Assembly (NCBI RefSeq): GCF_006345805.1
Contig: NC_043010.1
Coordinates: 38,564,001-38,628,000 of the forward strand
Reading direction: 5' to 3'
From: Octopus sinensis
Taxonomy: Eukaryota
DNA length: 64,000 nt
Shown in pieces: positions 3,772 to 62,054 of this stretch (the first letter of the stretch is position 1; every line of letters begins with the position of its first letter). Made by a program: the position numbers and the translations under genes. A model generated the notes under the pieces. The model was not told the DNA's origin and did no database searches. It saw nothing but the letters and a program-made list of their open reading frames with translations.

Positions 3772-3821
3772 GTAAGTAATAGTCTAGACTCTCTCTCTTT
3801 CCATCCATCCTTCTATAGATA

Positions 3822-5366: not shown

Positions 5367-5507
5367 ATATATATATATATGGCTGATGAATACGGGACAC
5401 TTGTATTTGCTGCAATTTTTGCAGCTTTTAATAAATCTGTTCTTCGTATGAAACAATTGTACTGAACAACTAATCCATTCTTGTTGCTTTTTTCTTGTAT
5501 ATGTATG

Positions 5508-5566
<59 letters not shown>

Positions 5567-5851
5567 ATGTATGTATATATATGTATGTATATATAGGTAT
5601 GTATGTATATGTATGCATGTATATGTATATATATGTATGTATATATATATGTATATATATGTATGTATATATATATGTATGTATATGTATATATATATAT
5701 ATGGCGGTGCCCCCAGCATGGCCACAGCTCATAAGCTGAAACTAGAATCAATCAATCAATCATATGTATGTATATGTATATATATATATGTATATATATG
5801 TGTATGTATATATATAATATATATGTATATATATGTGTGTATATATTATGT

Positions 5852-5885
<34 letters not shown>

Positions 5886-6550: not shown

Positions 6551-6634
6551 GTGGATAAATTCCATGCTTACTGTAAACCCACAATCAATCCACAGCTTAC
6601 AAAGTTTTGTATAGAATTAACAGGTATCACCCAG
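6551..6634 (+). CDS. ERI1: ERI1 coding exon
   Basis: tttcag acceptor, gtgaga donor, 84 nt in phase 0. VDKFHAYCKPTINPQLTKFCIELTGITQ is a typical ERI1-family segment. Confidence 0.95.
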
Positions 6635-6659
6635 GTGAGAATATTATTATTATTATTAT

Positions 6660-7445: not shown

Positions 7446-7559
7446 CATACTTGGAAACAAGTGATGGTTGATGACAGGAAGGGCTTCGGGCCATGGAAAA
7501 TCTGCATCAGTGAATTTCATCTAACCCATGCAAGCATGGAAAAGTGAATGTTAAAATCA

Positions 7560-7750
7560 TGCTCATCATCAACATCATTTAACGTCTGTAGTCCATGCTG
7601 GCAAGGGTTGGACAGTTTGACCAAGAGCAGGCAAGCTGGGGAGCTACACCAGACTCCAGTCTGCTTTGGTGTGGTTTGTATGGCTGGATGCCTTTCCTAA
7701 CACCAACCAATTTACAGTGTGTGCTTGGCACATTTTTGTGGCACTGCACA
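7560..7750 (-). mobile_element. RTE-LINE 3'-tail copy
   Basis: Same tail family as 1959-2190. Confidence 0.7.
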
Positions 7751-8340
7751 AGGCGCAGGAGTAGCTGTGTGGTAAGTAGTTTGCTTACCAACCACATGGT
7801 TTTGGGTTCAGTTCCACTGCGTGGTATCTTGGGCAAGCGTCTTCTACTATAGCCTCAGGCCGACCAAAGCCTTGTGAGTGGGTTTGGTAGACGGAAACTG
7901 AAAGAAGCCCATCATCTATATGTATATATATAGGCGCAAGAGTGGTTGTGTGGTAAGTAGCTTGCTTACCAACCACATGGTTTCGGGTTCAGTCCCACTG
8001 CGTGGTACCTCGGGCAAGTGTCTTCTACTATAGCTTCAAGCCGACCAAAGCCTTGTGGGTGGATTTGGTAGACGGAAACTAAAAGAAGCCCGTTGTATAT
8101 ATGTATGTATATATATGTATATATATTTGTGTGTCTGAGTTTGTCCCCCTGACATCGCTTGACAACAGATGCTGATGTGTTTACGTCCCTGTAACTTAGC
8201 AGTTCGGTAAAAGAGACCGATAGAATAAGTGCCAGGTTTACAAAGAATCAGTCTTGGGTTTGATATGCTCGACTAAAGGTGGTGCTCCAGCACGGCCACA
8301 GTTAAATGACTGAAACAAGTAAAAGAATAAAAGAGTAAAG
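7751..8340 (+). mobile_element. SINE1 (tRNA head, CORE-like ccttgggcaagt, internal microsatellite, (AAAGAGT)n tail) with a duplicated head
   Basis: The head ggcgcaggagtggctgtgtggtaagtagcttgcttaccaaccacatgg occurs twice (7751 and ~7932) before a single tail. Confidence 0.85.
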
Positions 8341-8662
8341 AGTGTTTTTATTGGCACTGTGTGAACACTTTTACATGGTTGCTTTTATGTGGCATCACTA
8401 TGAGAGTTTTTCACCACCAGGGGGACCAATTTTAACATTTCTACTGTGGTAGTAATTTTATCAAGAAATCTACAGCCTCCCCATCACTCCAGACAAGAAG
8501 GAGTATATTTTAATATATATTAACGAGCTTCCATTTATTAATCTGAAGGAAATTCCTATGATAGTTTGTCTTATATATCTACAAACAATACAAGCAAATT
8601 TTGTGTAACGTGTGACAAAATTGCATGTGAAATACATGCTAAAAAAAAAAAAATTAATGAGT

Positions 8663-8901
8663 AGGCACAGGAGTGGCTGTGTGGTATGTAGCTTGCTTAC
8701 CAATCACATGGTTCCGGGTTCAGTCATACTGTGTGGCACCTTGCGCAAGTGTCTTCTACTATAGCCTCAGGCTGACCAAAGCCTTGTGAGTGGATTTGAT
8801 AGATGGAAACTGAAAGAAGCCTGTCGTATATATGTATATGCATATATATATATATATGGTATATGTATATATATGTTGTATATGTATATGTATATGTATA
8901 T

Positions 8902-8933
<32 letters not shown>

Positions 8934-8937
8934 GTAT

Positions 8938-8971
<34 letters not shown>

Positions 8972-9010
8972 ATGTATAATATATATTATATATATATGTA
9001 TATATATATG

Positions 9011-9043
<33 letters not shown>

Positions 9044-9081
9044 GTATATATTATATATATATGTATATATATATATATGTA

Positions 9082-9113
<32 letters not shown>

Positions 9114-9334
9114 GTGTGTGTTTATGTGTCTGTGTTTGTCCCCCACAACATTGCTTGACAACCGATGCTGGTGTGTTTATGTCCCCGTAACTTAGCGGTT
9201 CGGCAAAAGAGACTGATAGAATAAGTACTAGGCTTATAAAGAATAAGTCCTGGGGGGTCGATTTGCTCAACTAGAGGCGGTGTTCCAGCATGGCCACAGT
9301 CAAATTACTGAAACAAGTAAAAGAGTAAAAAGAG
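8663..9334 (+). mobile_element. SINE1 full copy with ~300-bp internal (TA)/(TG) expansion
   Basis: Head at 8663, microsatellite at about 8827-9125, tail ends gaaacaagtaaaagagtaaaaagag. Confidence 0.88.
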
Positions 9335-9449
9335 CAATGGGTTTTATGAAATAGAAGAGTATTTTTAAATGTATTTATTTTATTTTCTATGAAACATAAC
9401 TGTAATTTTAAATGAATTTGAATTTTATGTGTGGCCATTATTGTTTCAG

Positions 9450-9583
9450 GAAACTGTCAACAATGCGCAAACATTTCCTCTGGTTATGTCACAAGCTCTA
9501 CAATGGCTTTTATCAAAAGGTTTACTGACCTCTGTCTCAAACAGTTCACATCGAAGAAATAAATTTGCTATTGTGACTGATGG
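9450..9583 (+). CDS. ERI1: ERI1 coding exon
   Basis: tttcag acceptor, gtaaga donor. ETVNNAQTFPLVMSQALQWLLSKGLL...KFAIVTDG; 134 nt, phases consistent with both neighbours. This exon is not in the ORF track. Confidence 0.93.
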
Positions 9584-9607
9584 GTAAGAAAATGCCTCTT
9601 TGATAAT

Positions 9608-9837
9608 TTCACCTTTTCGCATTTAAACCTGTCACATCCACCCAAAATATTCTATCTGTTTTATGTTCAAACTGTCCAGATTTAGCTTCTCTCACTTACC
9701 CTACAATGTCCATTCTAAAAATAAACTATCACATCCATTGAAATCTCAAAGCTACGAAATAATGCATGATTAGTTCAAAACGATCTGAATAAATAAACAA
9801 TACATTTGACAGAGGAATTTGAATGCTAAAGGGTTAA
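9608..9837. mobile_element. Degenerate piggyBac-type MITE
   Basis: ttcaccttttcgcatttaaa vs tttgaatgctaaagggttaa: 16/20 inverted match, ending in TTAA. Confidence 0.55.
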
Positions 9838-10278
9838 AAACACAAAAAATAATTTGTTTGTTTGTGTGGGTAAGGTGTTGGTTTATGGACCTCATTGTCA
9901 TTGTACAGCAGCAAGTGTGTTAATTCATTTTTTAAAATGGTTTAAATCATAAGAAGGGAAGAACCTTTGATCCCTTTTCAAGGAACTGGTGAGAGAAATG
10001 GAGGAAGTTATCCTTACCCAGGAAACTTGGCTCAAATGCTTTTAGCAGAGAGGGTGGGGTGGGGGTGGGACATGCATACACACACCTTTTTTTTTAAAGG
10101 TACTCAATAACCAGGTGTTAGCATTCGACTAAAAGATGGATTAAATTAACTACTGAGAACAAGAATAATTCCTTCAGTAGGCTTCGACACAGTTTCCATC
10201 AACCAAATTTCACTCACAAGGCTTTGGGTTGACCTGTTACGATATATAAATATATATATATATATATCTTAGGTTAGG

Positions 10279-10597
10279 AGCACTCCATCGGTTACGACAA
10301 TGAAGGTCCCAGCTGATATGATCAACGGAACAGCTTGCTCATGAAATTAACGTGCAAGTGGCTGAGCTCTCCACAGACACGTGTACCCCTAACCTAGTTC
10401 TCAGGGAGATTCAGTGTGACACAGAGTGTGACGAGGCTGGCCCGTTTTGAATTACAGGTACCACTCATTTTTGCCAGCTGAGTGAACTGGAGCTACAAGA
10501 AATAAAGTGTCTTGCTCAAGGACACAATGTATCGCCGGGAATTGAACTCATGACCTTACAATCGTGAGCCAAATACCCTAACCACTAAGCCACACAC
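10279..10597 (-). mobile_element. tRNA-derived SINE, head A + tail Y
   Basis: gtggcttagtggttaggg...gagttcaattccc head. Tail ends in cgtaaccgatggagtgct. Confidence 0.85.
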
Positions 10598-10788
10598 ATG
10601 CCATCAGATAAGATACATTATCATGAGTGAGTATCAAACACAGCAGTGTTTTTGCATGAGAAAAAAGAAAGATATCGTGTGTGTGTGCACTTGCTTTCAT
10701 TTTCATTCTATCTGTATGCGTATGTACCTGAAAACTTGTCACGGTAATTCCAGCTCATGTTAATGCATTTTTCCATTATATTTTTCAG

Positions 10789-11194
10789 ACCCTGGGACAT
10801 GGGACGTTTTCTTTACTACCAGTGCCAGTACAGTGGGGTGCAGTTTCCACGATGGGCCCGTCGCTGGATCAACATACGACGGCGCTATGAGAGTTTCTAC
10901 AGTTGCAAGAAAGTAGGTGGTCTGAAAGGCATGCTGGAAATGATGGGGATGTCTTTCGAAGGCCAGCTGCACTGCGGACTTGATGATGCGTACAACATTG
11001 CCAGGATTGCATTGCGACTGATGGCCGACGGATGCTGTTTGAAGATAAATGAATATCTCAATGCACCAATTGTGGATGTATCATCATCATCATCGTCAAC
11101 AACAGCAGCAGCAGAAGGATCGACATCGGTATCTGCTGCGCAAAGCAATTCAGAAGACAGCGATTCCCTGATGACAACACCAATGGCAAAATAA
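10789..11194 (+). CDS. ERI1: ERI1 terminal coding exon (ExoII and ExoIII motifs, Ser/Ala-rich tail, stop)
   Basis: tttcag acceptor. (G)PWDMGRFL gives the ExoII D and HCGLDDAYNIARI gives the ExoIII H and D. TAA at 11192-11194. Confidence 0.95.
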
Positions 11195-11664
11195 AATCAG
11201 TCACAGTTTCAGCCAGAAAGACTTCAGCGCCGACTCACTCGGTAGACATTGATGTAGCGAAAGAAATGAGCAAACTAAGTGTTGACTAACCCTTAGGTTT
11301 ATGGTTCTTCCACCTCGATGAAGACATATTGGGAATTGTCCTTTTACCATCGACTGTGATTCGCACTTCTCAGATTCTGTGATTTCAAATGATTGTCTTT
11401 CAGTTTGGTGTCTCAACAATCAAGGTCAAGTTGTTTCCAGCCATTATTGGAAGAAGCTTTAAAGACTTGAATTGCATACATTAAATTCTTTTTTTATTTA
11501 TATTCATTGCTGGTTTTCTTTCCCATTTTTGTTTCATCTTTTAAAAAATTCTATTTTAATTTCTTCTAATTTTTCTTCTCATTGTTATTGTTGTTACCAT
11601 CACTGTCCTCTCCTTCCTGCTCCTCCTCCTCTTACCATTTTTTTGTCGACATACTCTGCCTTTA

Positions 11665-12028: not shown

Positions 12029-13467
12029 TATAATTAATATAAAAAATAATGGCAATGTTATTAAAATAACTTCATTATTAACACTGTATCTAACTTTACC
12101 TTCCACCTGGGCTCCTGTGCAACAGTAATGATTGCAGGTAAAATTAATGGACAGAATCACAAAAAAATTCAGGTGAATAACAATAATAGGCCTATCTCTT
12201 AACTACCATATTTGTTCATTGCAGGCAAACTAATGGACAGAATCACAGAGCGGGGCTGGGGGATTCCCAGGAGAATAACAGTAATAGGTCTATCTTTCAA
12301 CTACTGTATTTGTTCACCTGAATTGCCACTTTCACCAGTTGGTAAAAAAAGAGACGGAGTGGTCAAGGGTGTACCGCCTTTGATTGTGGGTCTGTTTGAT
12401 CAAGGCTAAAGAGTAAAAGAATAACAACAGATGTTTGCACGAGTCATTGAAGAGTCCTTAGAAGCCGCTTGACTTGTTTGAAATAACAGCTAAATTCTTG
12501 AATCACACTGGATGATATTGTCTTGGAATAATAATAAAAAAGAGGATGGTTATAGTTGGAACACCAATGATCGTAAGTCTGGTTGATCAGGGCTAACGTG
12601 GGACTAAACAGCAACAGTATCAACAACAATAATAATGTTGTTGTAGCCGTCCAAGAATTTGGACCTGGAGATCTCCATTTCCAGTGACTTCGAGGGCCAC
12701 CTTCTAGTGGTGTCGGGCGTCAACGAAGAACCCTGGACTACAACAAGACGACCCAAAGTTTTTTTTTTTTTCCAAGGTCTGGGGTCTTCTGCCCCTAAGC
12801 CCTAGACCATCACCTAATCACCCTTACCCGTCTTGTTGCTTAACAACAACAACAACAGCAGCAGCAGTGATTACTTGAAAAAGAAAAGGAACATTACGTA
12901 ACTGCACTTAATGGATTTTGTGTTGTGAAAGAGGAAGACAATTTATTTAACAACATTGACAGCGATTATGGCAATTGTTTCATTAATTCATGCACATAAC
13001 TGGATAAAGTAGTTCTAGCCATTTAAGCATAACAGCAGAAGTTTATGGGGCAGTTGCTAGCAGGGGGTCATCCATCTGTTCTGTTTGGAGAGAATGTAGG
13101 AATTCATAGAAATAGTATTCAAACTTGCGTTGAATCAAGCAAAATTGATTAGAGGAGGTGAAAGGATGAAATCAAGGGACATGGGGTTAACAATTAGTTT
13201 GATTCAGCCATTGCAAAGAAGCCGTTTGTTGTCAGGTGTTGCTTGGACAGCGAATAGTGCAAACTTTTGAGCTATTACTTGTCTGAACTAGCACTCATGT
13301 ATTTGTTGCATTTGGAAGATTTGCAGATTGAGAAAGTTGGGCTCTACTGGCGAACCACTTCCAATGTACCCTCTACCAAACAGTGGAACTGTGTAGCATG
13401 AAACGGTGCATCAAAGCGAATTATCCTGTGTCTGCACCAGACTCAGGATAATTCACTATTTTGATCC

Positions 13468-14008
13468 CAGCGCCGCCTTGACTGGCTTCCGTACCGGTGG
13501 CACGTAAAAAGCACCAACCGATCGTGTACCGTTGCCAGCCTCTCCTGGCACCTGTGCCGATGGCACGTTAAAAGCACCATCTGTACGTGGCCGATGCCAG
13601 CCCCACCTTGTCTGGCTTCCGTGCTGGTAGCACTTAAAAAGCACCAACCGTTCGTGGCCGTTGCCAGCCTCCCCTGGCACCTGTGCCGATGGCACGTAAA
13701 AAGCACCATCTGTACGTGGCCGATGCCAGCGCTGCCTTGACTGGCTTCCGTGCCGGTGGCACGTAAAAAGCACCAACCGTTCGTGGCCGTTGCCAGCCTC
13801 CCCTGGCACCTGTGCCGGTGGCACGTAAAAAGCACCCACTACACTCACGGAGTGGTTGGCGTTAGGAAGGGCATCCAGCTGTAGAAACTCTGCCAGATCA
13901 GACTGGAGCCTGGTGCAGCCACCTGGCTTTCCAGACCCCGGTCGAACCGTCCAACCCATGCTAGCTTGGAAAACGGACGTTAAGCGATGATGATGATGAT
14001 GATGATGA
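13468..14008 (+). mobile_element. RTE 3'-tail element with an internal tandem array
   Basis: Six ggcacgtaaaaagcacc motifs at 13499, 13562, 13629, 13691, 13758 and 13820, followed by the standard tail and (GAT)n. Confidence 0.85.
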
Positions 14009-23691: not shown

Positions 23692-23741
<50 letters not shown>

Positions 23742-24169
23742 TTAACTATATCTACGTGTGTGTAAGTATAAACAAAGTAACATTTGTTTCATTTGAAGCA
23801 TTGAAATATTTTTGTCGAACGCAGAATTGCCGTTAAAATCAGCAGAAATACTGGGTAACCTACCCTTACAAAACGAAAAAATTGTCAATAAACAGCCAAA
23901 GGACTCGAACTCACATCCATCAAGAGTCCGGCTGAGTATTTTAATAGTAAGCTCAGCTGCCTGCTGACTAATTTTTAACCACCGATTTAGACGGCAAATA
24001 GCTCATTGAACAACACGTGTATATAAAGACAAATAAACTAATATTTGTTTTATTCGGCACGTCGAAATGTGTATTGTACAATTCAAACAAGAAGATATAA
24101 TGATATGTAATTGTAAGATTCAAGGACCTAGGTTTAGAAAGTTAATATACTTCGAGCAGTCCGAAATAT

Positions 24170-24370
24170 GTGACCGCGTGTGTACCGTTGGCGATTTTTT
24201 TCCTCCGTCTTCCCTTCTTTCGATCTTTCCTTTTCCTATGTTTCTGACGAAGAGCTCCGCTCGAAACGCTAAACCCTCCTTCTTTCCTGAGCGTCCAATA
24301 ATACTATACTTGTTCCACGTCCTCGCGTTGTTGTGTTTTCTCCTCGTGTTTCCATGTTTGGATTAACTAC
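24170..24370 (+). mobile_element. pLTR-like element with a HHR motif (one core substitution)
   Basis: gttt CTGACGA a gagc-tcc-gctc GAAA CG C T aaac at 24240-24274; U16.1 reads C. Ends in (TA)n. Confidence 0.65.
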
Positions 24371-24386
24371 ATATATATATATATAG

Positions 24387-24575
24387 GGATCTAATGCGCT
24401 TGGCTTAGATTTCCCTTGGGGGCTGCCCAGGTCGGAGCAATCTCAAGATTAATCAGCCGAAATCGCGAAGATGATCCGGTTCTTGACTGATGACTGAGGC
24501 TTCGAATGTCCCGTCCTGTGTTTCTTTTGTCGTCTCCTAGGTGTTTTACGTTTTGTCCCAATTTGTATATATTTT
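24387..24575 (+). repeat. (TA)n-embedded dispersed element homologous to the 706-bp satellite unit
   Basis: atctaatgc...gcttag...cttgggggctg...ggagcaa...cagccgaaat...gatgat...gactgatgactgaggcttcgaatg aligns by eye with the same stretch of each satellite unit. Confidence 0.75.
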
Positions 24576-24588
24576 ACTTTTTACATAT

Positions 24589-24630
<42 letters not shown>

Positions 24631-25556
24631 ATATATATTATATCATATATAATATATATATATATATATATAAACACAACTTTCAGGAACAATAATAGTT
24701 TATTGGCGCAGAAGGCTTTCCCATAGGTTTGTTGCAGGTTTTTCCCATATCGAAGTTAGTTCGATAATCTGAAAAAGTTTTTTTTTATTGTTTACTGTTA
24801 GCATCTAGTATTGCTATGAATGCGAATAAAAATCCAACTTCAGGGAATGGAGCAGGTAAAATTCAGGCTACATATGTTTCTTATCTAGCAAAACCTCGGA
24901 AATAATAATTACTCAATGAGGGGTGTTACACTAGCGACTCATCAGGTCGCAGATGCCTTAGTTAAATGGAGGTTAAATTGTCGGCAAGCGATTCCAAGTT
25001 AACACGCAGGAGATGTGATTTAAAATGACTGCATCGATTAGTATTTAACGTCTATGACTACTATATATATATATATATTGTATTTATATCTATTTATATT
25101 TATATCTATTTGTATTTATATCTATTTATATTTATTTATTATATCCTCTTGTAATGATTATGCCTATTGTATTGTATTACTCATTCATGTACGCTGTTTT
25201 GTTTAACCTTAATGTTCTTATGTAGTGGTTCAATAAAGTATGTGATTGTGTATTATCTGATAGTTGATTAATGATTTAGATGGATTTCTCCATTTTCTGA
25301 TTTTGTATATATATATATATATAATATAATATATATATATTATATATATATATGTGGTGGGTGTGTGTGTGTGTGTGAGAGTGGTGTGTGTTTATAAGTA
25401 TGTGTGTGTGTGTGATTAATCTATACATACATTATATATATATGCGCACACACCACATATGTGTTGTTTGTGTGTGTGTGGAAGTGTATGTGTGTATATG
25501 TGTTGTTTATATATGCATATATATATATGTATACACAATATATATCTATATATCTA

Positions 25557-33269: not shown

Positions 33270-33336
<67 letters not shown>

Positions 33337-33339
33337 CCT

Positions 33340-33711
33340 ATATATAGTTACATAGGAACACTCCGTCGGTTACGACGACTAGGGTCCCAGCTGATACGAT
33401 CAACGGAACAGCCTGCTCGTGAAATTAACGTGCAAATGATTGAGCACTCCACAGACACGCGTACCCCTAACGTAGTTCTCAGGGAGATTCAGCGTGACAC
33501 AGAGTGTGACAAGGCCGGCCCTTTGAAATACAGGTACAACTCATTTTTGCCAGCTGAGTGGACTGGAGCAACGTGAAATAAAGTGTCTTGCTCAAAGACA
33601 CAACGCGTCGCCGGGAATCGAACTCACGACCTTACAATCGTGAGTCGAATGCCCTAACCACTAAGCCACGCGCCTTCACCTACCTACCTACCTACCTACC
33701 TACCTACCTAC

Positions 33712-33806
<95 letters not shown>

Positions 33807-34185
33807 CCTATATATAGTTACATAGGAACACTCCGTCGGTTACGACGACTAGGGTCCCAGCTGATACGATCAACGGAACAGCCTGCTCGTGAAATTAACG
33901 TGCAAATGATTGAGCACTCCACAGACACGCGTACCCCTAACGTAGTTCTCAGGGAGATTCAGCGTGACACAGAGTGTGACAAGGCCGGCCCTTTGAAATA
34001 CAGGTACAACTCATTTTTGCCAGCTGAGTGGACTGGAGCAACGTGAAATAAAGTGTCTTGCTCAAAGACACAACGCGTCGCCGGGAATCGAACTCACGAC
34101 CTTACAATCGTGAGTCGAATGCCCTAACCACTAAGCCACGCGCCTTCACCTACCTACCTACCTACCTACCTACCTACCTACCTAC

Positions 34186-34240
<55 letters not shown>
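33340..34240 (-). repeat. Exact 470-bp tandem duplication of a head A + tail Y SINE bounded by (TACC)n(TATC)n
   Basis: cataggaaca at 33351 and 33821. The SINE bodies appear identical. Confidence 0.9.
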
Positions 34241-34242
<2 letters not shown>

Positions 34243-34485
34243 CAGCTATCTATCTGTTTGTCTATGTCCACAGAGTTGTTGAATGTAATTCTATATACAA
34301 ATGTGCGTCACTGGGTATTTGTAGGAGTAATGACAACATCAGAAAATTACCTTTCAACTGTTCGGGTTATTGACCGACAACTAAAATTATCTTATTACCC
34401 CTCTCTTAAAGGAAGCATTACATCTAATTATGCATACATAAATACATACATATATACATGTGTGCATGCATGTATATATATACAT

Positions 34486-35592: not shown

Positions 35593-38430
35593 TTTATTTA
35601 ATAAAATTTGCCATGAAGGCATTACAAAGAGGAGACGAACACGGACAAATATAAAATGGTGTAGTAGCTTTAAAAATTTATGATAAATTTATGATACAAT
35701 TTAAAAATTACAAATTTCAATTTACAAATTACAAATTACTAATTACCAATTACATGATAACATGTTACTCATTGCGATTTGCAATGACTTCCCTGAAGGA
35801 AAGGCATCCGATCACCAGGGTAGAACCCTTGCTTTCGCTTTCCTTTTCTTTTTTTTTTTGGACTCCACTTACCTGGAGGCAATCGCTCCCAACTTCCTTG
35901 CCATAGGCTTCCATCTTTTCATGAATCTATCTCGTGACAGGTACCTCTTCTCCAGCCTGATCTTACTACTGAGGTGGTAACTAAAATAGTTAACCAACCC
36001 CTGGTCGGATACAAAGTTACCCGTCACTATGCCTCTCACACGCGTCTTCCATGCTGCTTCTTTCAGTATGGCTACTACGCAGAAAAAGCAAGCTTTATTT
36101 TCCCTCTTAAGGGAAGGAGGTAGCACAATCTCGATGATAGATTCAGCTGATAGCTGTACTCTACCCATCGATGACAACAGTTGTTCTGTGAATGCTATCA
36201 GTCTCGTTAATTCCGGACATTCCACAAATGCGTGCGAGACGGTTTCCCTGTCCCGCCCTCACATAGAACATGTCAGCGAGACCGCACTTCTGTGCATTGG
36301 CAGTTTATCACGAACAGGTAATGTCGCACGGAAGCACTGCCAAACTGAAGGCCTTACTGCTGTATGTCATATCAAGGATGACTAGCTCACCTTCAGGGTC
36401 TACATAGACTGTACTTGTCCGCAGAGCCAAGTCTTTCCGGACTAGTACTACTACACCTCCTCTCCCTCTGGTCTGGCTAGGAGACATTATTTTCTCATAG
36501 TCATTCAGGAGGAGCGAGAAGGCTTGTAGACTGTCCAGCTTGGTCTCTGTAGCAACCATCACATGCATATCGTGTGATCTGAGGTCGTCGAGGAAACAAG
36601 CTTGCTTCCACTTCGAGCTCAGACCACGCACATTCAAACACCCAAGACTAAGTGTAGCCAAAACAAGGAAAAAAATACAAAGGTTCTACTTACCCTTCAC
36701 TAGTGATGTTGGGGCTGACCTCACAACACACAAAGCAGCCCTTTCCTCCTTCAAATATTCTGGAAGGTCCGGGATACTCCTGATGGTCTTTGGATACCTG
36801 TCCTCCAGTTGCCTGTAAAGGCCTTCCCCTATTCAGGCACATCTTTCTCTTAAGTCCTTGTGCTGTTCAAACAGCGTGGTGGTGTGGTGATCTTTTACAA
36901 TATCCTCAATTTATTTGTCTCTGGTGTCATATTTTACCAGGGTTTTCTGTTCGTTATCTTTCGTCTTTTTCTTTTTTTTCCTTGTGGGACAATGGGACGG
37001 GTTCGTTTCTTTTTTTGTGGTGTGGTGCTTCCTTTTTCGTTTTCTTTTGTGGGGGATGTGGATGGGGAAGGTGCGTCTGTTCGTTTCCGAACTGCTGTGA
37101 ACTCCCCCTCAACCACCTCCATGGTGTCGTCCGGGGGAGTTACATGTTCTGGTGCCACTTTAGAGGGGGTGGGTGTTTTTGACGTTGTCGGGACTGGTGT
37201 AAGCATGGTCTGGGGTTTTTGGGTGTCATGTTTGGGGGCGGGCACCACAGATGGGGGAGTGGGAACTTTTGTTTCTGAGGGGGATAATGCATGTGCAGGT
37301 TTGGGGTCTTTTTTGTAATTGAGGGGCCTGCTGCCTGTGCCACTTTTCTTTTCCATTGTTCACAGTCTATACGGAAGTGGCCTTTTTTTGCCACATTCGT
37401 AACACGTTGGCTTTTTGCTCTCTACTTGTATTCTGAGCATCCTCTCTGGAAGCATTTTGATGTCTTCTTGAGTTCCCTGAATAATGGCAGAAATGCTCTG
37501 CCCGAGCCAGTTTTGTGGGGCAGAGCGTGTGATCTGAAGGAAGGCGATTTTGTCCGTCACCGCCCTTACATCAACTTCAGGTGGCACTTCTGTCACTCTT
37601 ACTCGAGCAGTTCGTCTCCCCATGTAGGTTGGCAGAAGTACCAACTCCTTCGTTTTCAAGGGACTCACTGAGTGCTCTTGGGCTTTTACTTCTGTTTCAA
37701 ATCTGACCTCTATTTTGCCATAAGTACGGCCCCTCGCTATATACTTTATGTCTTCCCATATGGGAGCCAGACATTTTTCAATTTTGCACTGCTCAAAGTG
37801 CTTAAATTTCTTTGTTGAAGGACAGTATGTTTTGAAAACAACTGTCCTTCTTTTCAATTTTTCAACACAAGGTGAGGGTAATATTTTTATATCACCCCAC
37901 TCTTTCATTTGTTTCAAAAATCTCGGAGAGCTTTTCCTTTGGTAGTTCGACGTTTTCAGTAGCCACCACTGTAACTGCTGAAAATTTCTTAACTGGCTCT
38001 TCCAGTGAATTTTTCTTTGAAATTATTTCGACCGATTTAATCCCAGAAAACAGGAAACCCATAATGTTTTCCCTTTTTTTTCTCTCAACGAGGACAACAG
38101 TTCAAATCCCACCCCCGCTGGGTGCGAGACGTAACAACAAAGCCTACAAGGGTCAAAGTTAAATTTTTCACAGAATAATAAAAATACGGTATCCCAAAAA
38201 ACTGGAAACCTATAATATGTTTTTTTCCTCACAACGAGGACAACAGTTCAAATCTCACCCCCACTAGGGGCGGGGTGCCACAATAGAGCCTACAACGGGT
38301 AACATTAAATTTTTCACACAATAATAAATTAATTATCCCCCCAAAACGGGAAACCTATAATATTTTTTCCTCTTAATGAGGATAACAGTTCAAATCCAAC
38401 CCCGCTGGGGTAGGGTGGGGGGCACGACAA
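35593..38430 (-). mobile_element. Tx1/L1-clade LINE with ORF1 (CCHC knuckle), the APE N-terminus and the zf-RVT C-terminus, lacking the RT domain
   Basis: ORF1 CYECGKK/GHFRIDC across a frameshift near 37390. ORF2 from 36661: GCLNVRGL, ATETKL, GGVVVLV. At about 36345 it jumps to QCFRATLPVRDKL...CSM*GRDRETVSHAFVEC. AATAAA at the 3' end. Confidence 0.85.
38050..38430. repeat. Three ~144-bp tandem monomers upstream of the Tx1 ORF1
   Basis: aggaYaacagttcaaatc at 38091, 38237 and 38379. Confidence 0.85.
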
Positions 38431-46332: not shown

Positions 46333-46432
46333 NNNNNNNNNNNNNNNNNNNNNNNNNNNNNNNNNNNNNNNNNNNNNNNNNNNNNNNNNNNNNNNNNNNN
46401 NNNNNNNNNNNNNNNNNNNNNNNNNNNNNNNN
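46333..46432. other. Assembly gap (100 N)
   Basis: A run of N flanked by microsatellite. Confidence 1.
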
Positions 46433-50638: not shown

Positions 50639-51409
50639 CACAGGCCCCATTATTTAGAGAAGTTCAAGAGAGGAAATGTGATTTATGAAGAGAAGTTACT
50701 TAAAGCCATCGGAATTGAAACTGGACGTAGATTTCAATAATCAGAAAGTATTCTGAGTATTCTACGACACAACCTGGAAAAATAAAACGAATATTTAAAG
50801 AAATATAATGTTTAAATTGTCTCTTCACGAATGTATTTTGTAGAATGTATTTTGTAGAATATTTAGTGTTTGTAGCCTGGGTAAATACGTACGTACGTAC
50901 GTACGTACGTACGTATGTATGTATGTATGTATGTATGTATGTATGTATGTATGTATGTATGTATGTATGTATGTATGTATGCATGTATGTATGTATCTAT
51001 GTATGTGTGTATGTATCTAACTATGCACCTATTCGCCTAGGTATGTCTAAATGTATATATAAATATATGTACTCATATACATATATGTAAATAGATATAT
51101 ATAAATACATGCAATATATATATATGTATGTGTAAATATATATATTAATATATCATATATTGTATATATTTATCTATATGTCTATATATTTATTGATGTG
51201 TATACATATGTACGTGTATATGTATATATATATATGTATATATCTAATGTTTATATATATATATATATATATAATATATATGTAGTGATGTGTATACATA
51301 TATATGTGTGCATGTTTATACACACACATATACATATATGTATAGAGAGATTTAGATATCTATGTATGAATTGATGTATATACATACATACATTACATCC
51401 ATCCATCCA

Positions 51410-54400
51410 GAGCAAATATCAGAATTGAACAGCCGAAATTTGCTATGATGATTCGGTGTCTGACTGAAGATTGAAGGCTTCGAATGATTTGTCTGTGTTC
51501 CGTGTTCGTCCCTTCCTGTATTTCACGTTCATTATATATAAAAACATTCATTCTTATATTATTGCGGCGTTACGTGCACCCCCCCGTTTGTTTGTCCAAT
51601 TTTAAACCCTGCACGACTTCTATACACACTGTCTTTTACTACCCGCCATTGCTTCTTCACCAAACTTTTTGGCGCCCTCCGATTCTTCCCCTCTCTTCCT
51701 CCCCTCTTCCTCCCATCCTCCTTAATCCCTTCTTTCTCCTTTTCTCTTGGTCACTGATTCTGTCCCCTGCCTTCCAGCCTCTTTGATTCCCTCTCTCTCT
51801 GTCTCTCTCTTTCTCTCTCTCCTGCGACCTGCTGCTTCTTAAACCATTCTGTTGGCCTTCGTATCTCGACCAACATGTGTCCCCGCTACCGAAACGGTAA
51901 TTATTTCTACGCCAGCTATGTTGTTGTTGTGTTTTTGTCTCATTTGGTCTAAAGTCGTATGACAACCATCGTTATATATGTTTTGTTTATTCATTACTGT
52001 TTTCAATTTCGTTTTCGTCTCTTGTATTCACATCCGTCTTGTGCGTTCACATTCCTGTCTTCTACCAAGAAATCTAATGCTTACAGCTTAGTTTTTTTCT
52101 TGGGGCTGGCCGAGTTGGAGCAAATATCAGAATTGAACAGCCGAAATTTGCTATGATGATTCGGTGTCTGACTGAAGATTGAAGGCTTCGAATGATTTGT
52201 CTGTGTTCCGTGTTCGTCCCTTCCTGTATTTCACGTTCATTATATATAAAAACATTCATTCTTATATTATTGCGGCGTTACGTGCACCCCCCCGTTTGTT
52301 TGTCCAATTTTAAACCCTGCACGACTTCTATACACACTGTCTTTTACTACCCGCCATTGCTTCTTCTCACCAAACTTTTTGGCGCCCTCCGATTCTTCCC
52401 CTCTCTTCCTCCCCTCTTCCTCCCATCCTCCTTAATCCCTTCTTTCTCCTTTTCTCTGGTCACTGATTCTGTCCCCTGCCTTCCAGCCTCTTTGATTCCC
52501 TCTCTCTCTGTCTCTTTTTCTCTCTCTCCTGCGACCTGCTGCTTCTAAACCATTCTGTTGGCCTTCGTATCTCGACCAACATGTGTCCCCGCTACCGAAA
52601 CGGTAATTATTTCTACGCCAGCTATGTTGTTGTTGTGTTTTTGTCTCATTTGGTCTAAAGTCGTATGACAACCATCGTTATATATGTTTTGTTTATTCAT
52701 TACTGTTTTCAATTTCGTTTTCGTCTCTTGTATTCACATCCGTCTTGTGCGTTCACATTCCTGTCTTCTACCAAGAAATCTAATGCTTACAGCTTAGTTT
52801 TTTTCTTGGGGCTGGCCGAGTTGGAGCAAATATCAGAATTGAACAGCCGAAATTTGCTATGATGATTCGGTGTCTGACTGAAGATTGAAGGCTTCGAATG
52901 ATTTGTCTGTGTTCCGTGTTCGTCCCTTCCTGTATTTCACGTTCATTATATATAAAAACATTCATTCTTATATTATTGCGGCGTTACGTGCACCCCCCCC
53001 GTTTGTTTGTCCAATTTTAAACCCTGCACGACTTCTATACACACTGTCTTTTACTACCCGCCATTGCTTCTTCACCAAACTTTTTGGCGCCCTCCGATTC
53101 TTCCCCTCTCTTCCTCCCTCTTCCTCCCATCCTCCTTAATCCCTTCTTTCTCCTTTTCTCTTGGTCACTGATTCTGTCCCCTGCCTTCCAGCCTCTTTGA
53201 TTCCCTCTCTCTCTGTCTCTCTTTCTCTCTCTCTCTGCGACCTGCTGCTTCTTAAACCATTCTGTTGGCCTTCGTATCTCGACCAACATGTGTCCCCGCT
53301 ACCGAAACGGTAATTATTTCTACTACGCCAGCTATGTTGTTGTTGTGTTTTGTCTCATTTGGTCTAAAGTCGTATGACAACCATCGTTATATATGTTTTG
53401 TTTATTCATTACTGTTTTCAATTTCGTTTTCGTCTCTTGTATTCACATCCGTCTTGTGCGTTCACATTCCTGTCTTCTACCAAGAAATCTAATGCTTACG
53501 CTTTTTTTTTTTTCTTGGGGCTGGCCGAGTTGGAGCAAATATCAGAATTGAACAGCCGAAATTTGCTATGATGATTCGGTGTCTGACTGAAGATTGAAGG
53601 CTTCGAATGATTTGTCTGTGTTCCGTGTTCGTCCCTTCCTGTATTTCACGTTCATTATATATAAAAACATTCATTCTTATATTATTGCGGCGTTACGTGC
53701 ACCCCCCCCGTTTGTTTGTCCAATTTTAAACCCTGCACGACTTCTATACACACTGTCTTTTACTACCCGCCATTGCTTCTTCACCAAACTTTTTGGCGCC
53801 CTCCGATTCTTCCCCTCTCTTCCCCCCCTCTTCCTCCCATCCTCCTTAATCCCTTCTTTCTCCTTTTCTCTTGGTCACTGATTCTGTCCCCTGCCTTCCA
53901 GCCTCTTTGATTCCCTCTCTCTCTGTCTCTCTTTCTCTCTCTCCTGCGACCTGCTGCTTCTTAAACCATTCTGTTGGCCTTCGTATCTCGACCAACATGT
54001 GTCCCCGCTACCGAAACGGTAATTATTTCTACGCCAGCTATGTTGTTGTTGTGTTTTTGTCTCATTTGGTCTAAAGTCGTATGACAACCATCGTTATATA
54101 TGTTTTGTTTATTCATTACTGTTTTCAATTTCGTTTTCGTCTCTTGTATTCACATCCGTCTTGTGCGTTCACATTCCTGTCTTCTACCAAGAAATCTAAT
54201 GCTTACAGCTTAGTTTTTTCTTGGGGCTGGCCGAGTTGGAGCAAATATCAGAATTGAACAGCCGAAATTTGCTATGATGATTCGGTGTCTGACTGAAGAT
54301 TGAAGGCTTCGAATGATTTGTCTGTGTTCCGTGTTCGTCCCTTCCTGTATTTCACGTTCATTATATATAAAAACATTCATTCTTATATTATTGCGGCGTT

Positions 54401-57400
54401 ACGTGCACCCCCCCGTTTGTTTGTCCAATTTTAAACCCTGCACGACTTCTATACACACTGTCTTTTACTACCCGCCATTGCTTCTTCACCAAACTTTTTG
54501 GCGCCCTCCGATTCTTCCCCTCTCTTCCTCCCATCCTCCTCCCCTCCTCCTTAATCCCTTCTTTCTCCTTTTCTCTTGGTCACTGATTCTCTTTGATTCC
54601 CTCTCTCTCTGTCTCTCTTTCTCTCTCTCTCCTGCGACCTGCTGCTTCTTAAACCATTCTGTTGGCCTTCGTATCTCGACCAACATGTGTCCCCGCTACC
54701 GAAACGGTAATTATTTCTACGCCAGCTATGTTGTTGTTGTGTTTTTGTCTCATTTGGTCTAAAGTCGTATGACAACCATCGTTATATATGTTTTGTTTAT
54801 TCATTACTGTTTTCAATTTCGTTTTCGTCTCTTGTATTCACATCCGTCTTGTGCGTTCACATTCCTGTCTTCTACCAAGAAATCTAATGCTTACAGCTTA
54901 GTTTTTTTCTTGGGGCTGGCCGAGTTGGAGCAAATATCAGAATTGAACAGCCGAAATTTGCTATGATGATTCGGTGTCTGACTGAAGATTGAAGGCTTCG
55001 AATGATTTGTCTGTGTTCCGTGTTCGTCCCTTCCTGTATTTCACGTTCATTATATATAAAAACATTCATTCTTATATTATTGCGGCGTTACGTGCACCCC
55101 CCCGTTTGTTTGTCCAATTTTAAACCCTGCACGACTTCTATACACACTGTCTTTTACTACCCGCCATTGCTTCTTCACCAAACTTTTTGGCGCCCTCCGA
55201 TTCTTCCCCTCTCTTCCTCCCCTCTTCCTCCCATCCTCCTTAATCCCTTCTTTCTCCTTTTCTCTGGTCACTGATTCTGTCCCCTGCCTTCCAGCCTCTT
55301 TGATTCCCTCTCTCTCTGTCTCTCTTTCTCTCTCTCCTGCGACCTGCTGCTTCTTAAACCATTCTGTTGGCCTTCGTATCTCGACCAACATGTGTCCCCG
55401 CTACCGAAACGGTAATTATTTCTACGCCAGCTATGTTGTTGTTGTGTTTTGTCTCATTTGGTCTAAAGTCGTATGACAACCATCGTTATATATGTTTTGT
55501 TTATTCATTACTGTTTTCAATTTCGTTTTCGTCTCTTGTATTCACATCCGTCTTGTGCGTTCACATTCCTGTCTTCTACCAAGAAATCTAATGCTTACAG
55601 CTTAGTTTTTTTCTTGGGGCTGGCCGAGTTGGAGCAAATATCAGAATTGAACAGCCGAAATTTGCTATGATGATTCGGTGTCTGACTGAAGATTGAAGGC
55701 TTCGAATGATTTGTCTGTGTTCCGTGTTCGTCCCTTCCTGTATTTCACGTTCATTATATATAAAAACATTCATTCTTATATTATTGCGGCGTTACGTGCA
55801 CCCCCCCGTTTGTTTGTCCAATTTTAAACCCTGCACGACTTCTATACACACTGTCTTTTACTACCCGCCATTGCTTCTTCACCAAACTTTTTGGCGCCCT
55901 CCGATCTTCTTCCTCTTCTCTCTTCCTCCCTCTTCCTCCCATCCTCCTTAATCCCTTCTTTCTCCTTTTCTCTTGGTCACTGATTCTGTCCCCTGCCTTC
56001 CAGCCTCTTTGATTCCCTCTCTCTCTGTCTCTCTTCTCTCTCTCCTGCGACCTGCTGCTTCTTAACCATTCTGTTGGCCTTCGTATCTCGACCAACATGT
56101 GTCCCCGCTACCGAAACGGTAATTATTTCTACGCCAGCTATGTTGTTGTTGTGTTTTTGTCTCATTTGGTCTAAAGTCGTATGACAACCATCGTTATATA
56201 TGTTTTGTTTATTCATTACTGTTTTCAATTTCGTTTTCGTCTCTTGTATTCACATCCGTCTTGTGCGTTCACATTCCTGTCTTCTACCAAGAAATCTAAT
56301 GCTTACAGCTTAGTTTTTTTCTTGGGGCTGGCCGAGTTGGAGCAAATATCAGAATTGAACAGCCGAAATTTGCTATGATGATTCGGTGTCTGACTGAAGA
56401 TTGAAGGCTTCGAATGATTTGTCTGTGTTCCGTGTTCGTCCCTTCCTGTATTTCACGTTCATTATATATAAAAACATTCATTCTTATATTATTGCGGCGT
56501 TACGTGCACCCCCCCGTTTGTTTGTCCAATTTTAAACCCTGCACGACTTCTATACACACTGTCTTTTACTACCCGCCATTGCTTCTCACCACCACTTTTG
56601 GCGCCCTCCGATTCTTCCCCTCTCTTCCTCCCCTCTTCCTCCATCCTCCTTAATCCCTTCTTTCTCCTTTTCTCTTGGTCACTGATTCTGTCCCCTGCCT
56701 TCCAGCCTCTTTGATTCCCTCTCTCTCTGTCTCTCTTTTCTCTCTCTCCTGCGACCTGCTGCTTCTTAAACCATTCTGTTGGCCTTCGTATCTCGACCAA
56801 CATGTGTCCCCGCTACCGAAACGGTAATTATTTCTACGCCAGCTATGTTGTTGTTGTGTTTTTGTCTCATTTGGTCTAAAGTCGTATGACAACCATCGTT
56901 ATATATGTTTTGTTTATTCATTACTGTTTTCAATTTCGTTTTCGTCTCTTGTATTCACATCCGTCTTGTGCGTTCACATTCCTGTCTTCTACCAAGAAAT
57001 CTAATGCTTACAGCTTAGTTTTTTTTTCTTGGGGCTGGCCGAGTTGGAGCAAATATCAGAATTGAACAGCCGAAATTTGCTATGATGATTCGGTGTCTGA
57101 CTGAAGATTGAAGGCTTCGAATGATTTGTCTGTGTTCCGTGTTCGTCCCTTCCTGTATTTCACGTTCATTATATATAAAAACATTCATTCTTATATTATT
57201 GCGGCGTTACGTGCCCCCCCCGTTTGTTTGTCCAATTTTAAACCCTGCACGACTTCTATACACACTGTCTTTTACTACCCGCCATTGCTTCTTCCACCAA
57301 ACTTTTGGCGCCCTCCGATTCTTCCCCTCTCTTCCTCCCCTCTTCCTCCCATCCTCCTTAATCCCTTCTTTCTCCTTTTCTCTTGGTCACTGATTCTGTC

Positions 57401-57893
57401 CCCTGCCTTCCAGCCTCTTTGATTCCCTCTCTCTCTGTCTCTCTTTCTCTCTCCTGCGACCTGCTGCTTCTTAAACCATTCTGTTGGCCTTCGTATCTCG
57501 ACCAACATGTGTCCCCGCTACCGAAACGGTAATTATTTCTACGCCAGCTATGTTGTTGTTGTGTTTTTGTCTCATTTGGTCTAAAGTCGTATGACAACCA
57601 TCGTTATATATGTTTTGTTTATTCATTACTGTTTTCAATTTCGTTTTCGTCTCTTGTATTCACATCCGTCCTGTGCGTTCACATTCCTGTCTTCTACCAA
57701 GAAATCTAATGCTTACAGCTTAGTTTTTTTCTTGGGGCTGGCCGAGTTGGAGCAAATATCAGAATTGAACAGCCGAAATTTGCTATGATGATTCGGTGTC
57801 TGACTGAAGATTGAAGGCTTCGAATGATTTGTCTGTGTTCCGTGTTCGTCCCTTCCTGTATTTCACGTTCATTATATATAAAAACATTCATTC
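51410..57893 (+). repeat. Tandem array (satellite) of ~706-bp units: 9 full copies plus a 143-bp partial copy
   Basis: agcaaatatc at 51411, 52119, 52825, 53534, 54240, 54929, 55633, 56341, 57048 and 57751. All repeated ORFs in the track derive from this array. Confidence 0.97.
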
Positions 57894-57946
57894 ATTTATA
57901 TATATATATACATGGATATATAACACACACACACACACACACTCAC

Positions 57947-59006: not shown

Positions 59007-59291
59007 AAGCCTCGATCTCATATTTGTTGAAAGTTGAAGTGTTTTCACATGATGCCATAATACAGAAGACTTTATAGAAGCATTGAGCTCATCCACTTCT
59101 GTTCCTCTTGGAACAACTGGTAGTGTTTGTCGAAAGTCTCCTGACGATAATACTGTGACATTTTCCATCATGGAATTGCAATTTCTAATGTCTTATAATG
59201 TTCTGTCAACAGCTTCAAAAGCTAGAGTGGTGAGAACCTCAACAATTGCGATAAAGATATTGCAATCTTGCAAATGCAGCCGCTTGGACAG
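59007..59291 (-). pseudogene. Helitron Pif1-like helicase fragment
   Basis: LAFEAVDRTL*DIRNCNSMMENVTVLSSGDFRQTLPVVPRGTEVDELNASIKSSVLWHHVKTLQLSTNMR. GDFRQTLPV is the Helitron/Pif1 motif III. Not in the ORF track. Confidence 0.82.
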
Positions 59292-59883
59292 GTATTTTAG
59301 TTATCAACCCCGAAAAAAAAAAAAAAGAATGAAAATTGATTTCCGTGAGACTAGAACTCAAAACGCTACGACATGGGGTACTCTATCGCTCGCCCGGGGA
59401 TATCCTACTAATCTAAAAATATTTCAGCCAACTGCTACAAAAAAGTTAGAATTAATATTAAAGTGAAGGCAGAATCGTTACTGCGCCGGGTAAAATGCTT
59501 AGTGGCATTTCGTCCGTCTTTACATTGAGTTCAAATTCCACCGATAAAGTAAGTACCAGTTGAACATTGGAATTGATGTTATCAACTTATCCCATCCCTC
59601 GAAATTGCTGGCACAATACTATTTAGATTTGGGAGAAGTTCTTGCCCTGCTAAACTCTGGGCCCCTTTTATGTTGGAAAGGTAGTAATTACAGGGAAGGA
59701 AAAATAGAATTCTATGAAAAATATATCGGTAATTTTGCGGGATCTTTTCGTATTCTTTTTCGTTTAATACGATTAGGTTTATGATACGTGACATCGGGAA
59801 TAGAAAAATTGGTTGTGTGTCGTCAAGTCGAAATTAAAACAATATATACATACATATACATATATACATGTGTGTATGTATGT

Positions 59884-61920: not shown

Positions 61921-62054
61921 GTTCTATATTTTAGAGATGAGGAATTCTGTTCATTATTTACATTGGACAAATACATGTCCTCATTTTGTTTTTTGTTACC
62001 ACAACGTTTCGGCTGATTTACTCTCCAGCCATCATCAGGTGTCCTGGTAGAATT
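61921..62054 (-). mobile_element. pLTR-like element of the 19-kb family
   Basis: Shares the aattcctcatctct..aatatagaac end with 19400-19425. Confidence 0.75.
62000..62041 (-). ncRNA. Minimal type I hammerhead with intact core
   Basis: cac CUGAUGA u ggcug-gagaguaaau-cagcc GAAA CG U U gug: palindromic stem III ACGU, GUU triplet. Confidence 0.7.

What the first reader, a model, noticed from the sequence alone, without database searches (positions are those of the whole stretch)
51410..57893. 706-bp satellite built from a dispersed, (TA)n-embedded element: possible rolling-circle or retrozyme multimer
Seen: 9.2 nearly identical units. Differences are mostly indels in homopolymer and CT tracts; unit 5 is 689 bp with a ~17-bp deletion. 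About 130-200 bp of each unit aligns with the lone element at 24387-24575. The array starts inside that homologous segment and ends at its 3' end, followed by (TA)n, leaving a 143-bp terminal redundancy. Each unit contains CTGAAGA, a ggctg...cagcc-GAAA stem, agcaaat/atttgct and taccg-aaa-cggta hairpins, and a strongly pyrimidine-skewed + strand. Inference: a single young amplification from a circular or tandem intermediate, as for Penelope pLTR arrays or ribozyme-bearing satellites, rather than an old centromeric satellite.
Basis: partly seen in the sequence, partly recalled or inferred. Interest (0 to 1): 0.72.

Follow-up and report, generated by a model that had tools for sequence, protein, structure and literature searches.

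The report
Young 706-bp tandem array, no ribozyme
A 6.5-kb stretch made of nine near-identical 706-bp copies is real and was seeded by an old dispersed repeat that sits in (TA)n tracts, but it carries no self-cleaving RNA motif and looks like an ordinary, recently expanded non-coding tandem repeat.

Summary
Bases 51410-57893 are 9.2 head-to-tail copies of a 689-709 bp unit, 96-99% identical. They differ mostly by indels in homopolymer and CT tracts. About 190 bp of each unit ("H") is significantly homologous to a lone copy at 24387-24575 (65-73% identity; nhmmer E=1e-15; alignment z about 20).

The array begins inside H, 68 nt from its 5' end, and ends at H's 3' end. Three of the four element or array boundaries abut (TA)n.

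The ribozyme/retrozyme reading fails:
- Rfam gives no ribozyme match, even at E<=10.
- No hammerhead core is present on either strand.
- The unit RNA folds no better than shuffled sequence (z about 0).
- No reverse transcriptase or GIY-YIG coding remnant lies near either locus.

Best reading: a (TA)n-associated, 5'-truncation-prone dispersed element left two direct copies here. Unequal exchange or replication slippage between them then expanded the interval into a young array with no function needed.

Still open: whether the whole 706 bp is the mobile element, possibly mobilised by a hammerhead-less Naiad-type Penelope-like element. Testing that needs the rest of the genome, which these tools could not reach. 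Ordinary; low interest.

The parts
51410..57893 (+). Tandem array: a 144-bp partial copy followed by nine units of 689-709 bp (9.18 units in all)
51410..51553 (+). First, 5'-truncated copy of the H segment. It lacks the first 68 nt of H and abuts a (CATA/CATC)n microsatellite.
52068..52261 (+). H segment inside a unit (example). It is the about 194-bp part that is homologous to the lone element. It recurs every ~706 bp; the last copy is about 57700-57893.
52262..52773 (+). Y segment of a unit (example): about 512 bp, pyrimidine-rich with CT tracts. It has no relative elsewhere in the window and opens with the TA-like 10-mer TTATATTATT at the H/Y junction.
54231..54919 (+). Unit 5: 689 bp, with a 19-bp deletion that is private to this unit
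24387..24575 (+). Lone dispersed copy of the H element, 65-73% identical to the copies in the array
24371..24385 (.). (TA)n tract directly 5' of the lone copy
24585..24672 (.). (AT)45 tract about 10 nt 3' of the lone copy
57897..57911 (.). (TA)n tract 4 nt 3' of the end of the array
51380..51409 (.). (CATA)n/(CATC)n microsatellite at the 5' junction of the array. It follows an impure TA-rich stretch at 51042-51320.

Best explanation
This is a young, non-coding, locally expanded tandem array: a nascent tandem repeat derived from a transposable element.

An old dispersed element, H, is found in (TA)n tracts and can be truncated at its 5' end. That pattern suggests a retroposon whose sense strand is the + strand. 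H left two direct copies at this site: a 144-bp 5'-truncated copy on the left and a complete copy about 560 bp to its right.

Out-of-register recombination (unequal exchange) or replication slippage between the two copies duplicated the interval again and again. The result is (H'-Y-H)n, that is, 9 units plus a 144-bp terminal redundancy.

Two sub-versions remain open:
- (a) H alone (about 200 bp) is the element, and the 512-bp Y segment is ordinary intervening DNA.
- (b) The whole ~700-bp unit is the element, inserted twice at one TA-rich target, and the lone copy is a 5'-truncated relative.

No RNA catalysis, coding capacity or cellular function is needed or indicated.

Shown here: the array, the homology, the boundaries, the link with (TA)n, and the absence of ribozyme, RNA structure and reading frames. 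Inferred: the recombination mechanism and the retroposon nature of H.
For: **Array and age**
- The array and its exact limits are established.
- Units are about 98-99% identical, while H in the array is only 65-73% identical to the lone copy. So an old family underwent a recent local expansion.

**Boundaries**
- Both array ends fall in H. The left end is at H position 68 and the right end is at H's 3' end. This is what exchange between two direct H copies predicts. It is unlikely for a random 706-bp duplication; my rough estimate is about 1%.
- Three of the four element or array boundaries lie within 10 nt of a (TA)>=6 tract. Only 6% of window positions do, which points to TA-targeted insertion.
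- The H/Y junction inside each unit keeps a TA-like 10-mer. McGurk and Barbash 2018 (PMC5932611) describe tandems that form by double insertion at a preferred target, keep the target at the junction, and later expand by unequal exchange.

**Nothing coding or structured**
- No reading frame is conserved between units.
- No ribozyme or other Rfam family matches.
- The RNA shows no excess structure.

**Context**
- The same window holds several other local tandem duplications, some of which contain SINE sequence. Duplications of this kind therefore recur in this stretch.
Against: - No other genomic copies could be examined, so the two sub-versions cannot be told apart. The retroposon nature of H rests on one truncated copy.
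- The 5' edge of H inside the unit has no TA tract. This fits sub-version (b), or a one-step multimer, better than sub-version (a).
- Adjacent units are no more alike than distant ones. Stepwise exchange therefore has no direct signature here; a single burst fits equally well.
- Many differences between units look like long-read homopolymer errors, so the exact copy number and the apparent age are soft.
Confidence: 0.6

Rival explanations
1. The multimer formed during retrotransposition. On this view the ~700-bp unit is a non-autonomous element copied by the machinery of a Penelope-like element, such as the hammerhead-less, (TA)n-targeting Naiad clade. It was inserted as a head-to-tail concatemer with a 5'-truncated first copy, either by template switching or by reverse transcription of a circular or multimeric RNA.
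For: - The form matches partial tandems of Penelope-like elements: a truncated copy upstream of full copies, in one orientation, ending at the element's 3' end.
- The element is associated with (TA)n.
- Craig et al. 2021 (PMC8557442) report that Naiads prefer (TA)n, lack canonical hammerheads, form partial tandems, and survive as remnants in cephalopods.
- A 2026 preprint links tandem retrozymes to Penelope-like elements.
- Units show no neighbour structure, which is compatible with a single burst.
Against: - No RVT or GIY-YIG coding remnant was found in 19.5-29.5, 40.5-51.4 or 57.9-64 kb. The only reverse transcriptase in the window is a LINE fragment 46 kb away.
- No inverted truncated copy is present.
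- Nine copies is far more than the usual two-copy pseudo-LTR structure.
- No 3'-end match to any Penelope-like element could be tested.
- Per the same paper, Naiads in cephalopods were inactivated long ago, whereas this array is young.
Confidence: 0.15
2. A retrozyme or ribozyme-bearing satellite. Each unit would encode a self-cleaving RNA, and the array would be transcribed, cut into monomers and circularised.
For: Only the tandem arrangement and the short strings CTGAAGA and CAGCC-GAAA.
Against: - No hammerhead, twister, pistol, hatchet, HDV-like or other Rfam ribozyme matches at E<=10 on either strand, and none at gathering score anywhere in the window.
- No CUGANGA-helix II-GAAA core was found. 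The motifs lie in the wrong order.
- Fold z is about 0 on both strands. Metazoan retrozymes are 150-450 nt and highly self-paired, with a type I hammerhead in each monomer (PMC7229834).
- Stems are not conserved in the lone copy.
Confidence: 0.02
3. A DNA rolling-circle product of the Helitron or Helentron type. The array would have been generated or carried by a rolling-circle transposon.
For: - TA flanks are compatible with Helitron insertion between A and T.
- H starts with A|TC in both copies.
- A PIF1-like helicase fragment lies 1.1 kb downstream, at 59007-59300.
Against: - No conserved CTRR 3' end or subterminal hairpin is present in H.
- The helicase fragment covers only about 100 aa, is decayed, lies on the opposite strand and is cut off by another repeat.
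- No Rep domain was found anywhere nearby.
Confidence: 0.04
4. An assembly artefact. On this view a 1-3 copy repeat was inflated by long-read mis-assembly, and the differences between units are read errors.
For: - Most differences are homopolymer or CT-tract indels, typical of uncorrected long reads.
- A scaffold gap lies 5 kb upstream, at 46333-46432.
Against: - Some units carry private, non-homopolymer variants: the 19-bp deletion in unit 5, 3-4-bp insertions in units 3 and 7, and a few substitutions.
- Both junctions with unique flanks are clean.
- A 6.5-kb array is within the span of single long reads.
Confidence: 0.1

Closest known systems
Tandem arrays derived from transposable elements and expanded by unequal exchange (double-insertion model; McGurk and Barbash 2018, PMC5932611)
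   Same: - Head-to-tail units contain a dispersed-repeat sequence.
- The array is bounded by the repeat, which leaves a terminal redundancy.
- A target-like TA sequence is kept at the junction.
- The expansion is young and confined to one locus, comparable to the roughly 16-copy hobo array described there.
   Different: - The founding element is unclassified.
- It is not known whether the unit is one whole element, or an element plus 512 bp of other DNA.
- There are no population data.
Partial tandems (pseudo-LTRs) of Penelope-like elements, especially the Naiad clade (Craig et al. 2021, PMC8557442)
   Same: - A 5'-truncated copy sits directly upstream of full copies in the same orientation.
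- The site is embedded in (TA)n.
- No hammerhead is present, as in Naiads.
   Different: - There is no reverse transcriptase or GIY-YIG reading frame in or near the array.
- The unit is 0.7 kb, not 3.4-4.4 kb.
- There are nine copies instead of about two.
- There is no inverted copy.
- No tested sequence links it to any Penelope-like element.
Metazoan non-LTR retrozymes (Cervera and de la Pena 2020, PMC7229834)
   Same: Non-coding monomers in head-to-tail multimers, within an AT-rich invertebrate genome.
   Different: - There is no type I hammerhead.
- The monomer is 706 bp, against 150-450 bp.
- The RNA is not unusually self-paired.

Membership tests
Metazoan non-LTR retrozyme | A type I hammerhead ribozyme in every monomer | tested here: not met
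   Rfam cmscan at E<=10 over more than two units, both strands, gave no ribozyme family. A custom scan for the hammerhead core found none.
Metazoan non-LTR retrozyme | Monomer of about 150-450 bp giving a highly self-paired RNA | tested here: not met
   The unit is 706 bp. Its minimum free energy equals that of shuffles (z -0.06 and +0.03).
Metazoan non-LTR retrozyme | Head-to-tail multimers | tested here: met
   9.18 units on one strand
Metazoan non-LTR retrozyme | Expressed as linear and circular monomer RNA | not testable with these tools
   No transcriptome data are available here.
Penelope-like element (partial tandem / pseudo-LTR) | A reading frame with a Penelope-type reverse transcriptase and a GIY-YIG endonuclease, in the element or as a linked autonomous partner | tested here: not met
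   Units have no conserved reading frame. Pfam found no RVT or GIY-YIG in stop-free segments of 50 aa or more within about 10 kb (6 kb on the array's 3' side, where the window ends) of the array or 5 kb of the lone copy. A partner elsewhere in the genome could not be searched for.
Penelope-like element (partial tandem / pseudo-LTR) | A 5'-truncated copy directly upstream of a full copy in the same orientation | tested here: met
   A 144-bp truncated first copy is followed by full units.
Penelope-like element (partial tandem / pseudo-LTR) | Insertion bias for microsatellites ((TA)n in the Naiad clade) | tested here: inconclusive
   Three of four boundaries lie within 10 nt of a (TA)>=6 tract, against 6% of window positions. 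Only two loci are available.
Penelope-like element (partial tandem / pseudo-LTR) | An adjacent inverted 5'-truncated copy (frequent but not obligatory) | tested here: not met
   The unit has no minus-strand match anywhere in the window.
Penelope-like element (partial tandem / pseudo-LTR) | A 3' end shared with an autonomous Penelope-like element of the same genome | not testable with these tools
The paper's supplement is not held.
Tandem array derived from a transposable element by unequal exchange | Near-identical head-to-tail units that contain sequence of a dispersed repeat | tested here: met
Tandem array derived from a transposable element by unequal exchange | Array ends fall within the repeated element, leaving a terminal redundancy | tested here: met
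   The array starts at H position 68 and ends at H's 3' end.
Satellite DNA in the strict sense | Long arrays and high genomic abundance | not testable with these tools
   Only one 6.5-kb array is visible. No relatives turned up in the protein and metagenome collections searched.
Helitron/Helentron-borne tandem repeat | A 5' TC and 3' CTRR terminus with a subterminal hairpin, plus Rep/Hel linkage | tested here: not met
   H starts with TC in both copies, but no conserved CTRR end or hairpin is present. The only helicase sequence is a decayed PIF1 fragment on the other strand, 1.1 kb away.
tRNA-derived SINE | A tRNA-like head with A and B boxes | tested here: not met
   ARAGORN found no tRNA. 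Rfam gave no tRNA match at E<=10. The strings TGGCCGAGTTGG and GGCTTCGAATG only resemble the boxes, and no D or T stems are present.

The most novel reading that the evidence does not exclude
The 706-bp unit is a complete, hammerhead-less non-autonomous retroelement. It would be mobilised by a (TA)n-targeting Penelope-like element of the Naiad type and inserted as a multimer. That would make it a ribozyme-free counterpart of animal retrozymes.
Probability: 0.12. Interest if true: 0.55.

Novelty: new member of a known kind. Interest (0 to 1): 0.2.

Why it matters
As it stands this is a routine example of how a dispersed repeat can seed a young tandem array. Its use is for repeat annotation and as a locus likely to vary in copy number.

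It would matter more only if genome-wide data showed the whole unit to be mobile and to insert as multimers into (TA)n. That would show Penelope-like machinery making tandem non-autonomous elements without any ribozyme. It would bear on the open question of what hammerheads contribute to such elements.

Tried and rejected
**Motif, structure and coding tests**
1. Ribozymes. Rfam at gathering score on the whole window, Rfam at E<=10 on the array and on the lone locus, and a custom hammerhead-core scan found nothing. The only hits were chance matches of microRNA and snoRNA models to the flanking microsatellites.
2. RNA structure. Whole-unit folds on both strands gave z about 0. The RNAalifold consensus of the lone and unit H segments gave z -1.8 and -2.2. 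It had 6 compensatory pairs, against 4.3 +/- 1.8 in column shuffles. This is not significant.
3. tRNA or SINE head. ARAGORN found none.
4. Coding. Reading frames differ between units. Pfam found no RVT or GIY-YIG near either locus.
5. Larger element around the array. There are no LTR- or TIR-like repeats in the flanks and no inverted copy.
6. Extension of the homology beyond H. The lone copy's flanks against the rest of the unit were not significant. The unit has no internal sub-repeats.

**Searches for further copies**
7. Further copies elsewhere were not found.
   - Exact look-ups of window reading frames found nothing.
   - Two protein searches with translations of the unit found nothing.
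   - Two DNA-pattern scans of metagenome contigs gave 0 and 38 hits. The 38 were chance matches without extended similarity.
   - The Craig et al. supplement with consensus sequences of Penelope-like elements is not held.

**Source organism**
8. The source organism was not identified.
   - An ERI1-like exon finds its best relative at 89% amino-acid and 84.5% nucleotide identity in a Logan contig from run SRR11869391.
   - That run accession appears in no paper searched.
   - From memory only, the abundant SINE looks octopod.
Full report
**Setting.** The window is eukaryotic. It is dense in microsatellites (124 Tandem Repeats Finder rows, many of them (TA)n) and in SINE copies, and it has a scaffold gap at 46333-46432. 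It holds an ERI1-like exonuclease gene at about 3.5-11.2 kb, whose relatives carry PF00929. The closest sequence I could reach is 84.5% identical over 857 nt, in a Logan contig from run SRR11869391, so the source species itself is not in the collections. From memory only, the common SINE looks octopod. I could not verify this.

**The observation.** blastn of one unit against the window gives nine full copies plus two partial ones, all on the + strand. Periods are 689-709 bp and identity is 95.9-99.3%.

That is 6484 bp, or 9.18 units.

Unit 5 (54231-54919) is 689 bp and has a private 19-bp deletion. Units 3 and 7 have private 3-4-bp insertions. Most other differences are length changes in C/T runs and CT tracts.

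Pairwise, units differ by about 7 mismatch columns and about 5 indel events. About 0.8% of columns differ outside the CT-rich block. Adjacent units are no more alike than distant ones.

The + strand of the unit is 67% pyrimidine. The unit has no internal sub-repeat.

**The dispersed relative.** A stretch of about 194 bp in each unit (H; for example 52068-52261) aligns with 24387-24575.
- The Smith-Waterman score is 137, against 34 +/- 5 for shuffles.
- nhmmer with the unit's H alone finds the lone copy at E=1.2e-15.
- Identity is 65% over 190 nt and 73% over the first 135.
- The remaining 512 bp of the unit (Y) has no relative elsewhere in the window.
- The lone copy's flanks do not match the rest of the unit.

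The family is therefore old and the array is young.

**Boundaries.** The array begins at H position 68, next to a (CATA/CATC)n microsatellite. It ends at H's 3' end (…AAAAACATTCATTC), 4 nt before a (TA)n tract.

The lone copy lies between a (TA)n tract (24371-24385) and (AT)45 (24585-24672). Only 6.1% of window positions lie within 10 nt of a perfect (TA)>=6 tract. Three of four boundaries doing so is unlikely by chance; my rough estimate is p of about 0.004-0.01.

Inside each unit, H's 3' end is followed by the TA-like TTATATTATT. H's 5' edge has no TA tract.

**Test of the ribozyme/retrozyme idea.**
- Rfam finds nothing at gathering score in the whole window. It finds no ribozyme family at E<=10 in 51300-53000 or in 23700-24700, on either strand.
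- A direct scan for CUGANGA, a helix II of at least 3 bp, and GAAA finds nothing in a unit dimer or at the lone locus.
- The unit RNA folds at -113.4 kcal/mol (+ strand) and -130.7 kcal/mol (- strand). Shuffles give -113.1 and -130.9, so z is -0.06 and +0.03.
- For H, the consensus fold of the lone and unit copies has z of -1.8 and -2.2. It has 6 compensatory pairs, against 4.3 +/- 1.8 in column shuffles; 28% of shuffles reach 6.
- The AGCAAAT/ATTTGCT stem loses two of its pairs in the lone copy.

Metazoan retrozymes are defined by a type I hammerhead in each 150-450-bp monomer and by highly self-paired RNA (PMC7229834). Those features were tested here and were not met.

**Test of the Penelope and rolling-circle ideas.**
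- The units have no shared reading frame.
- A Pfam scan covered every stop-free segment of 50 aa or more in 19.5-29.5, 40.5-51.4 and 57.9-64 kb. It finds only a PIF1-like helicase fragment at 59007-59300 on the minus strand. The fragment is decayed, covers about 100 aa and is cut off by another repeat.
- The only reverse transcriptase in the window is a LINE fragment at 3.9-5.7 kb.
- No inverted copy of the unit and no LTR- or TIR-like repeats flank the array.
- H has no conserved Helitron 3' end.

On the other side, Craig et al. 2021 report that Naiad Penelope-like elements prefer (TA)n, lack canonical hammerheads and form partial tandems with a truncated upstream copy. They persist as old remnants in cephalopods (PMC8557442). 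The form of the array fits that description. Nothing in the sequence ties it to such an element.

**Most likely mechanism.** The array has the structure H'-(Y-H)x9. This is what out-of-register recombination or slippage between two direct copies of H produces. It is not what duplication of an arbitrary 706-bp segment produces, because such an array would have whole-number copies with ends unrelated to H.

The truncated left copy and the TA association point to a retroposon-like element with a target preference. McGurk and Barbash 2018 show that target preference makes tandem or near-tandem double insertions common. They also show that such tandems can expand by unequal exchange and keep the target sequence at the junction (PMC5932611).

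Two versions remain. In one, H alone is the element and Y is ordinary DNA. In the other, the whole unit is the element. The second fits the missing TA tract at H's internal 5' edge and the TA-like junction somewhat better. I put the local-expansion reading, either version, at about 0.6. I put a one-step multimer made during Penelope-type retrotransposition at about 0.15, an inflated assembly at about 0.1, a Helitron-type origin at about 0.04 and a true ribozyme element at about 0.02.

**What could not be done.** No further copies of H or Y could be fetched.
- Exact look-ups found nothing.
- Two protein searches with unit translations found nothing.
- Two metagenome pattern scans gave nothing beyond chance matches.
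- Reads, transcripts and sister genomes were out of reach.

The genome-wide search in the next-steps list is what would separate the remaining readings.

**Verdict.** The ribozyme/retrozyme part does not hold, and a Penelope-like origin is unproven. It is a new, unnamed member of a well-known kind of sequence, and its interest is low.

Noticed in passing
window 3520-11191 (+), with 3941-5732 (-): An ERI1-like 3'-5' exonuclease gene, with exons around 3520-3843, 6503-6703 and 10748-11191. Its relatives carry PF00929 RNase_T. A LINE reverse-transcriptase fragment (RVT_1) lies antisense in one of its introns.
   Followed up: partly
window 59007-59300 (-): A decayed PIF1-like (Helitron-type) helicase fragment: PF05970, E=9e-18, about 100 aa, with a stop. 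It is cut off at about 58950 by a repeat that also occurs at 61952-62054.
   Followed up: partly
window 33271-34255; 7751-8113; 13463-13836; 38074-38410: Other local tandem duplications: 470 bp x2.1 (99% identical, made of (TATC)n plus a SINE piece), 181 bp x2, 129/67 bp x2.9-5.4, and 146 bp x2.3. Tandem duplications of sequence containing repeats recur in this stretch.
   Followed up: no
window 24244-24268 (+): A hammerhead-core look-alike, CTGACGA-AGAGCTCCGCTC-GAAAC, about 120 nt upstream of the lone element and inside a pyrimidine-rich repeat. It has an extra A before helix II and no helix I. Rfam gives no match at E<=10.
   Followed up: yes
window 46333-46432: A run of 100 N (a scaffold gap) 5 kb upstream of the array.
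   Followed up: no
L039 (Logan SRR11869391), 92-930, vs window 10748-11583: A genomic contig from another species is 84.5% identical over 857 nt, non-coding sequence included, and ends in the start of the same SINE family. A related genome therefore exists in public read sets but could not be named.
   Followed up: partly
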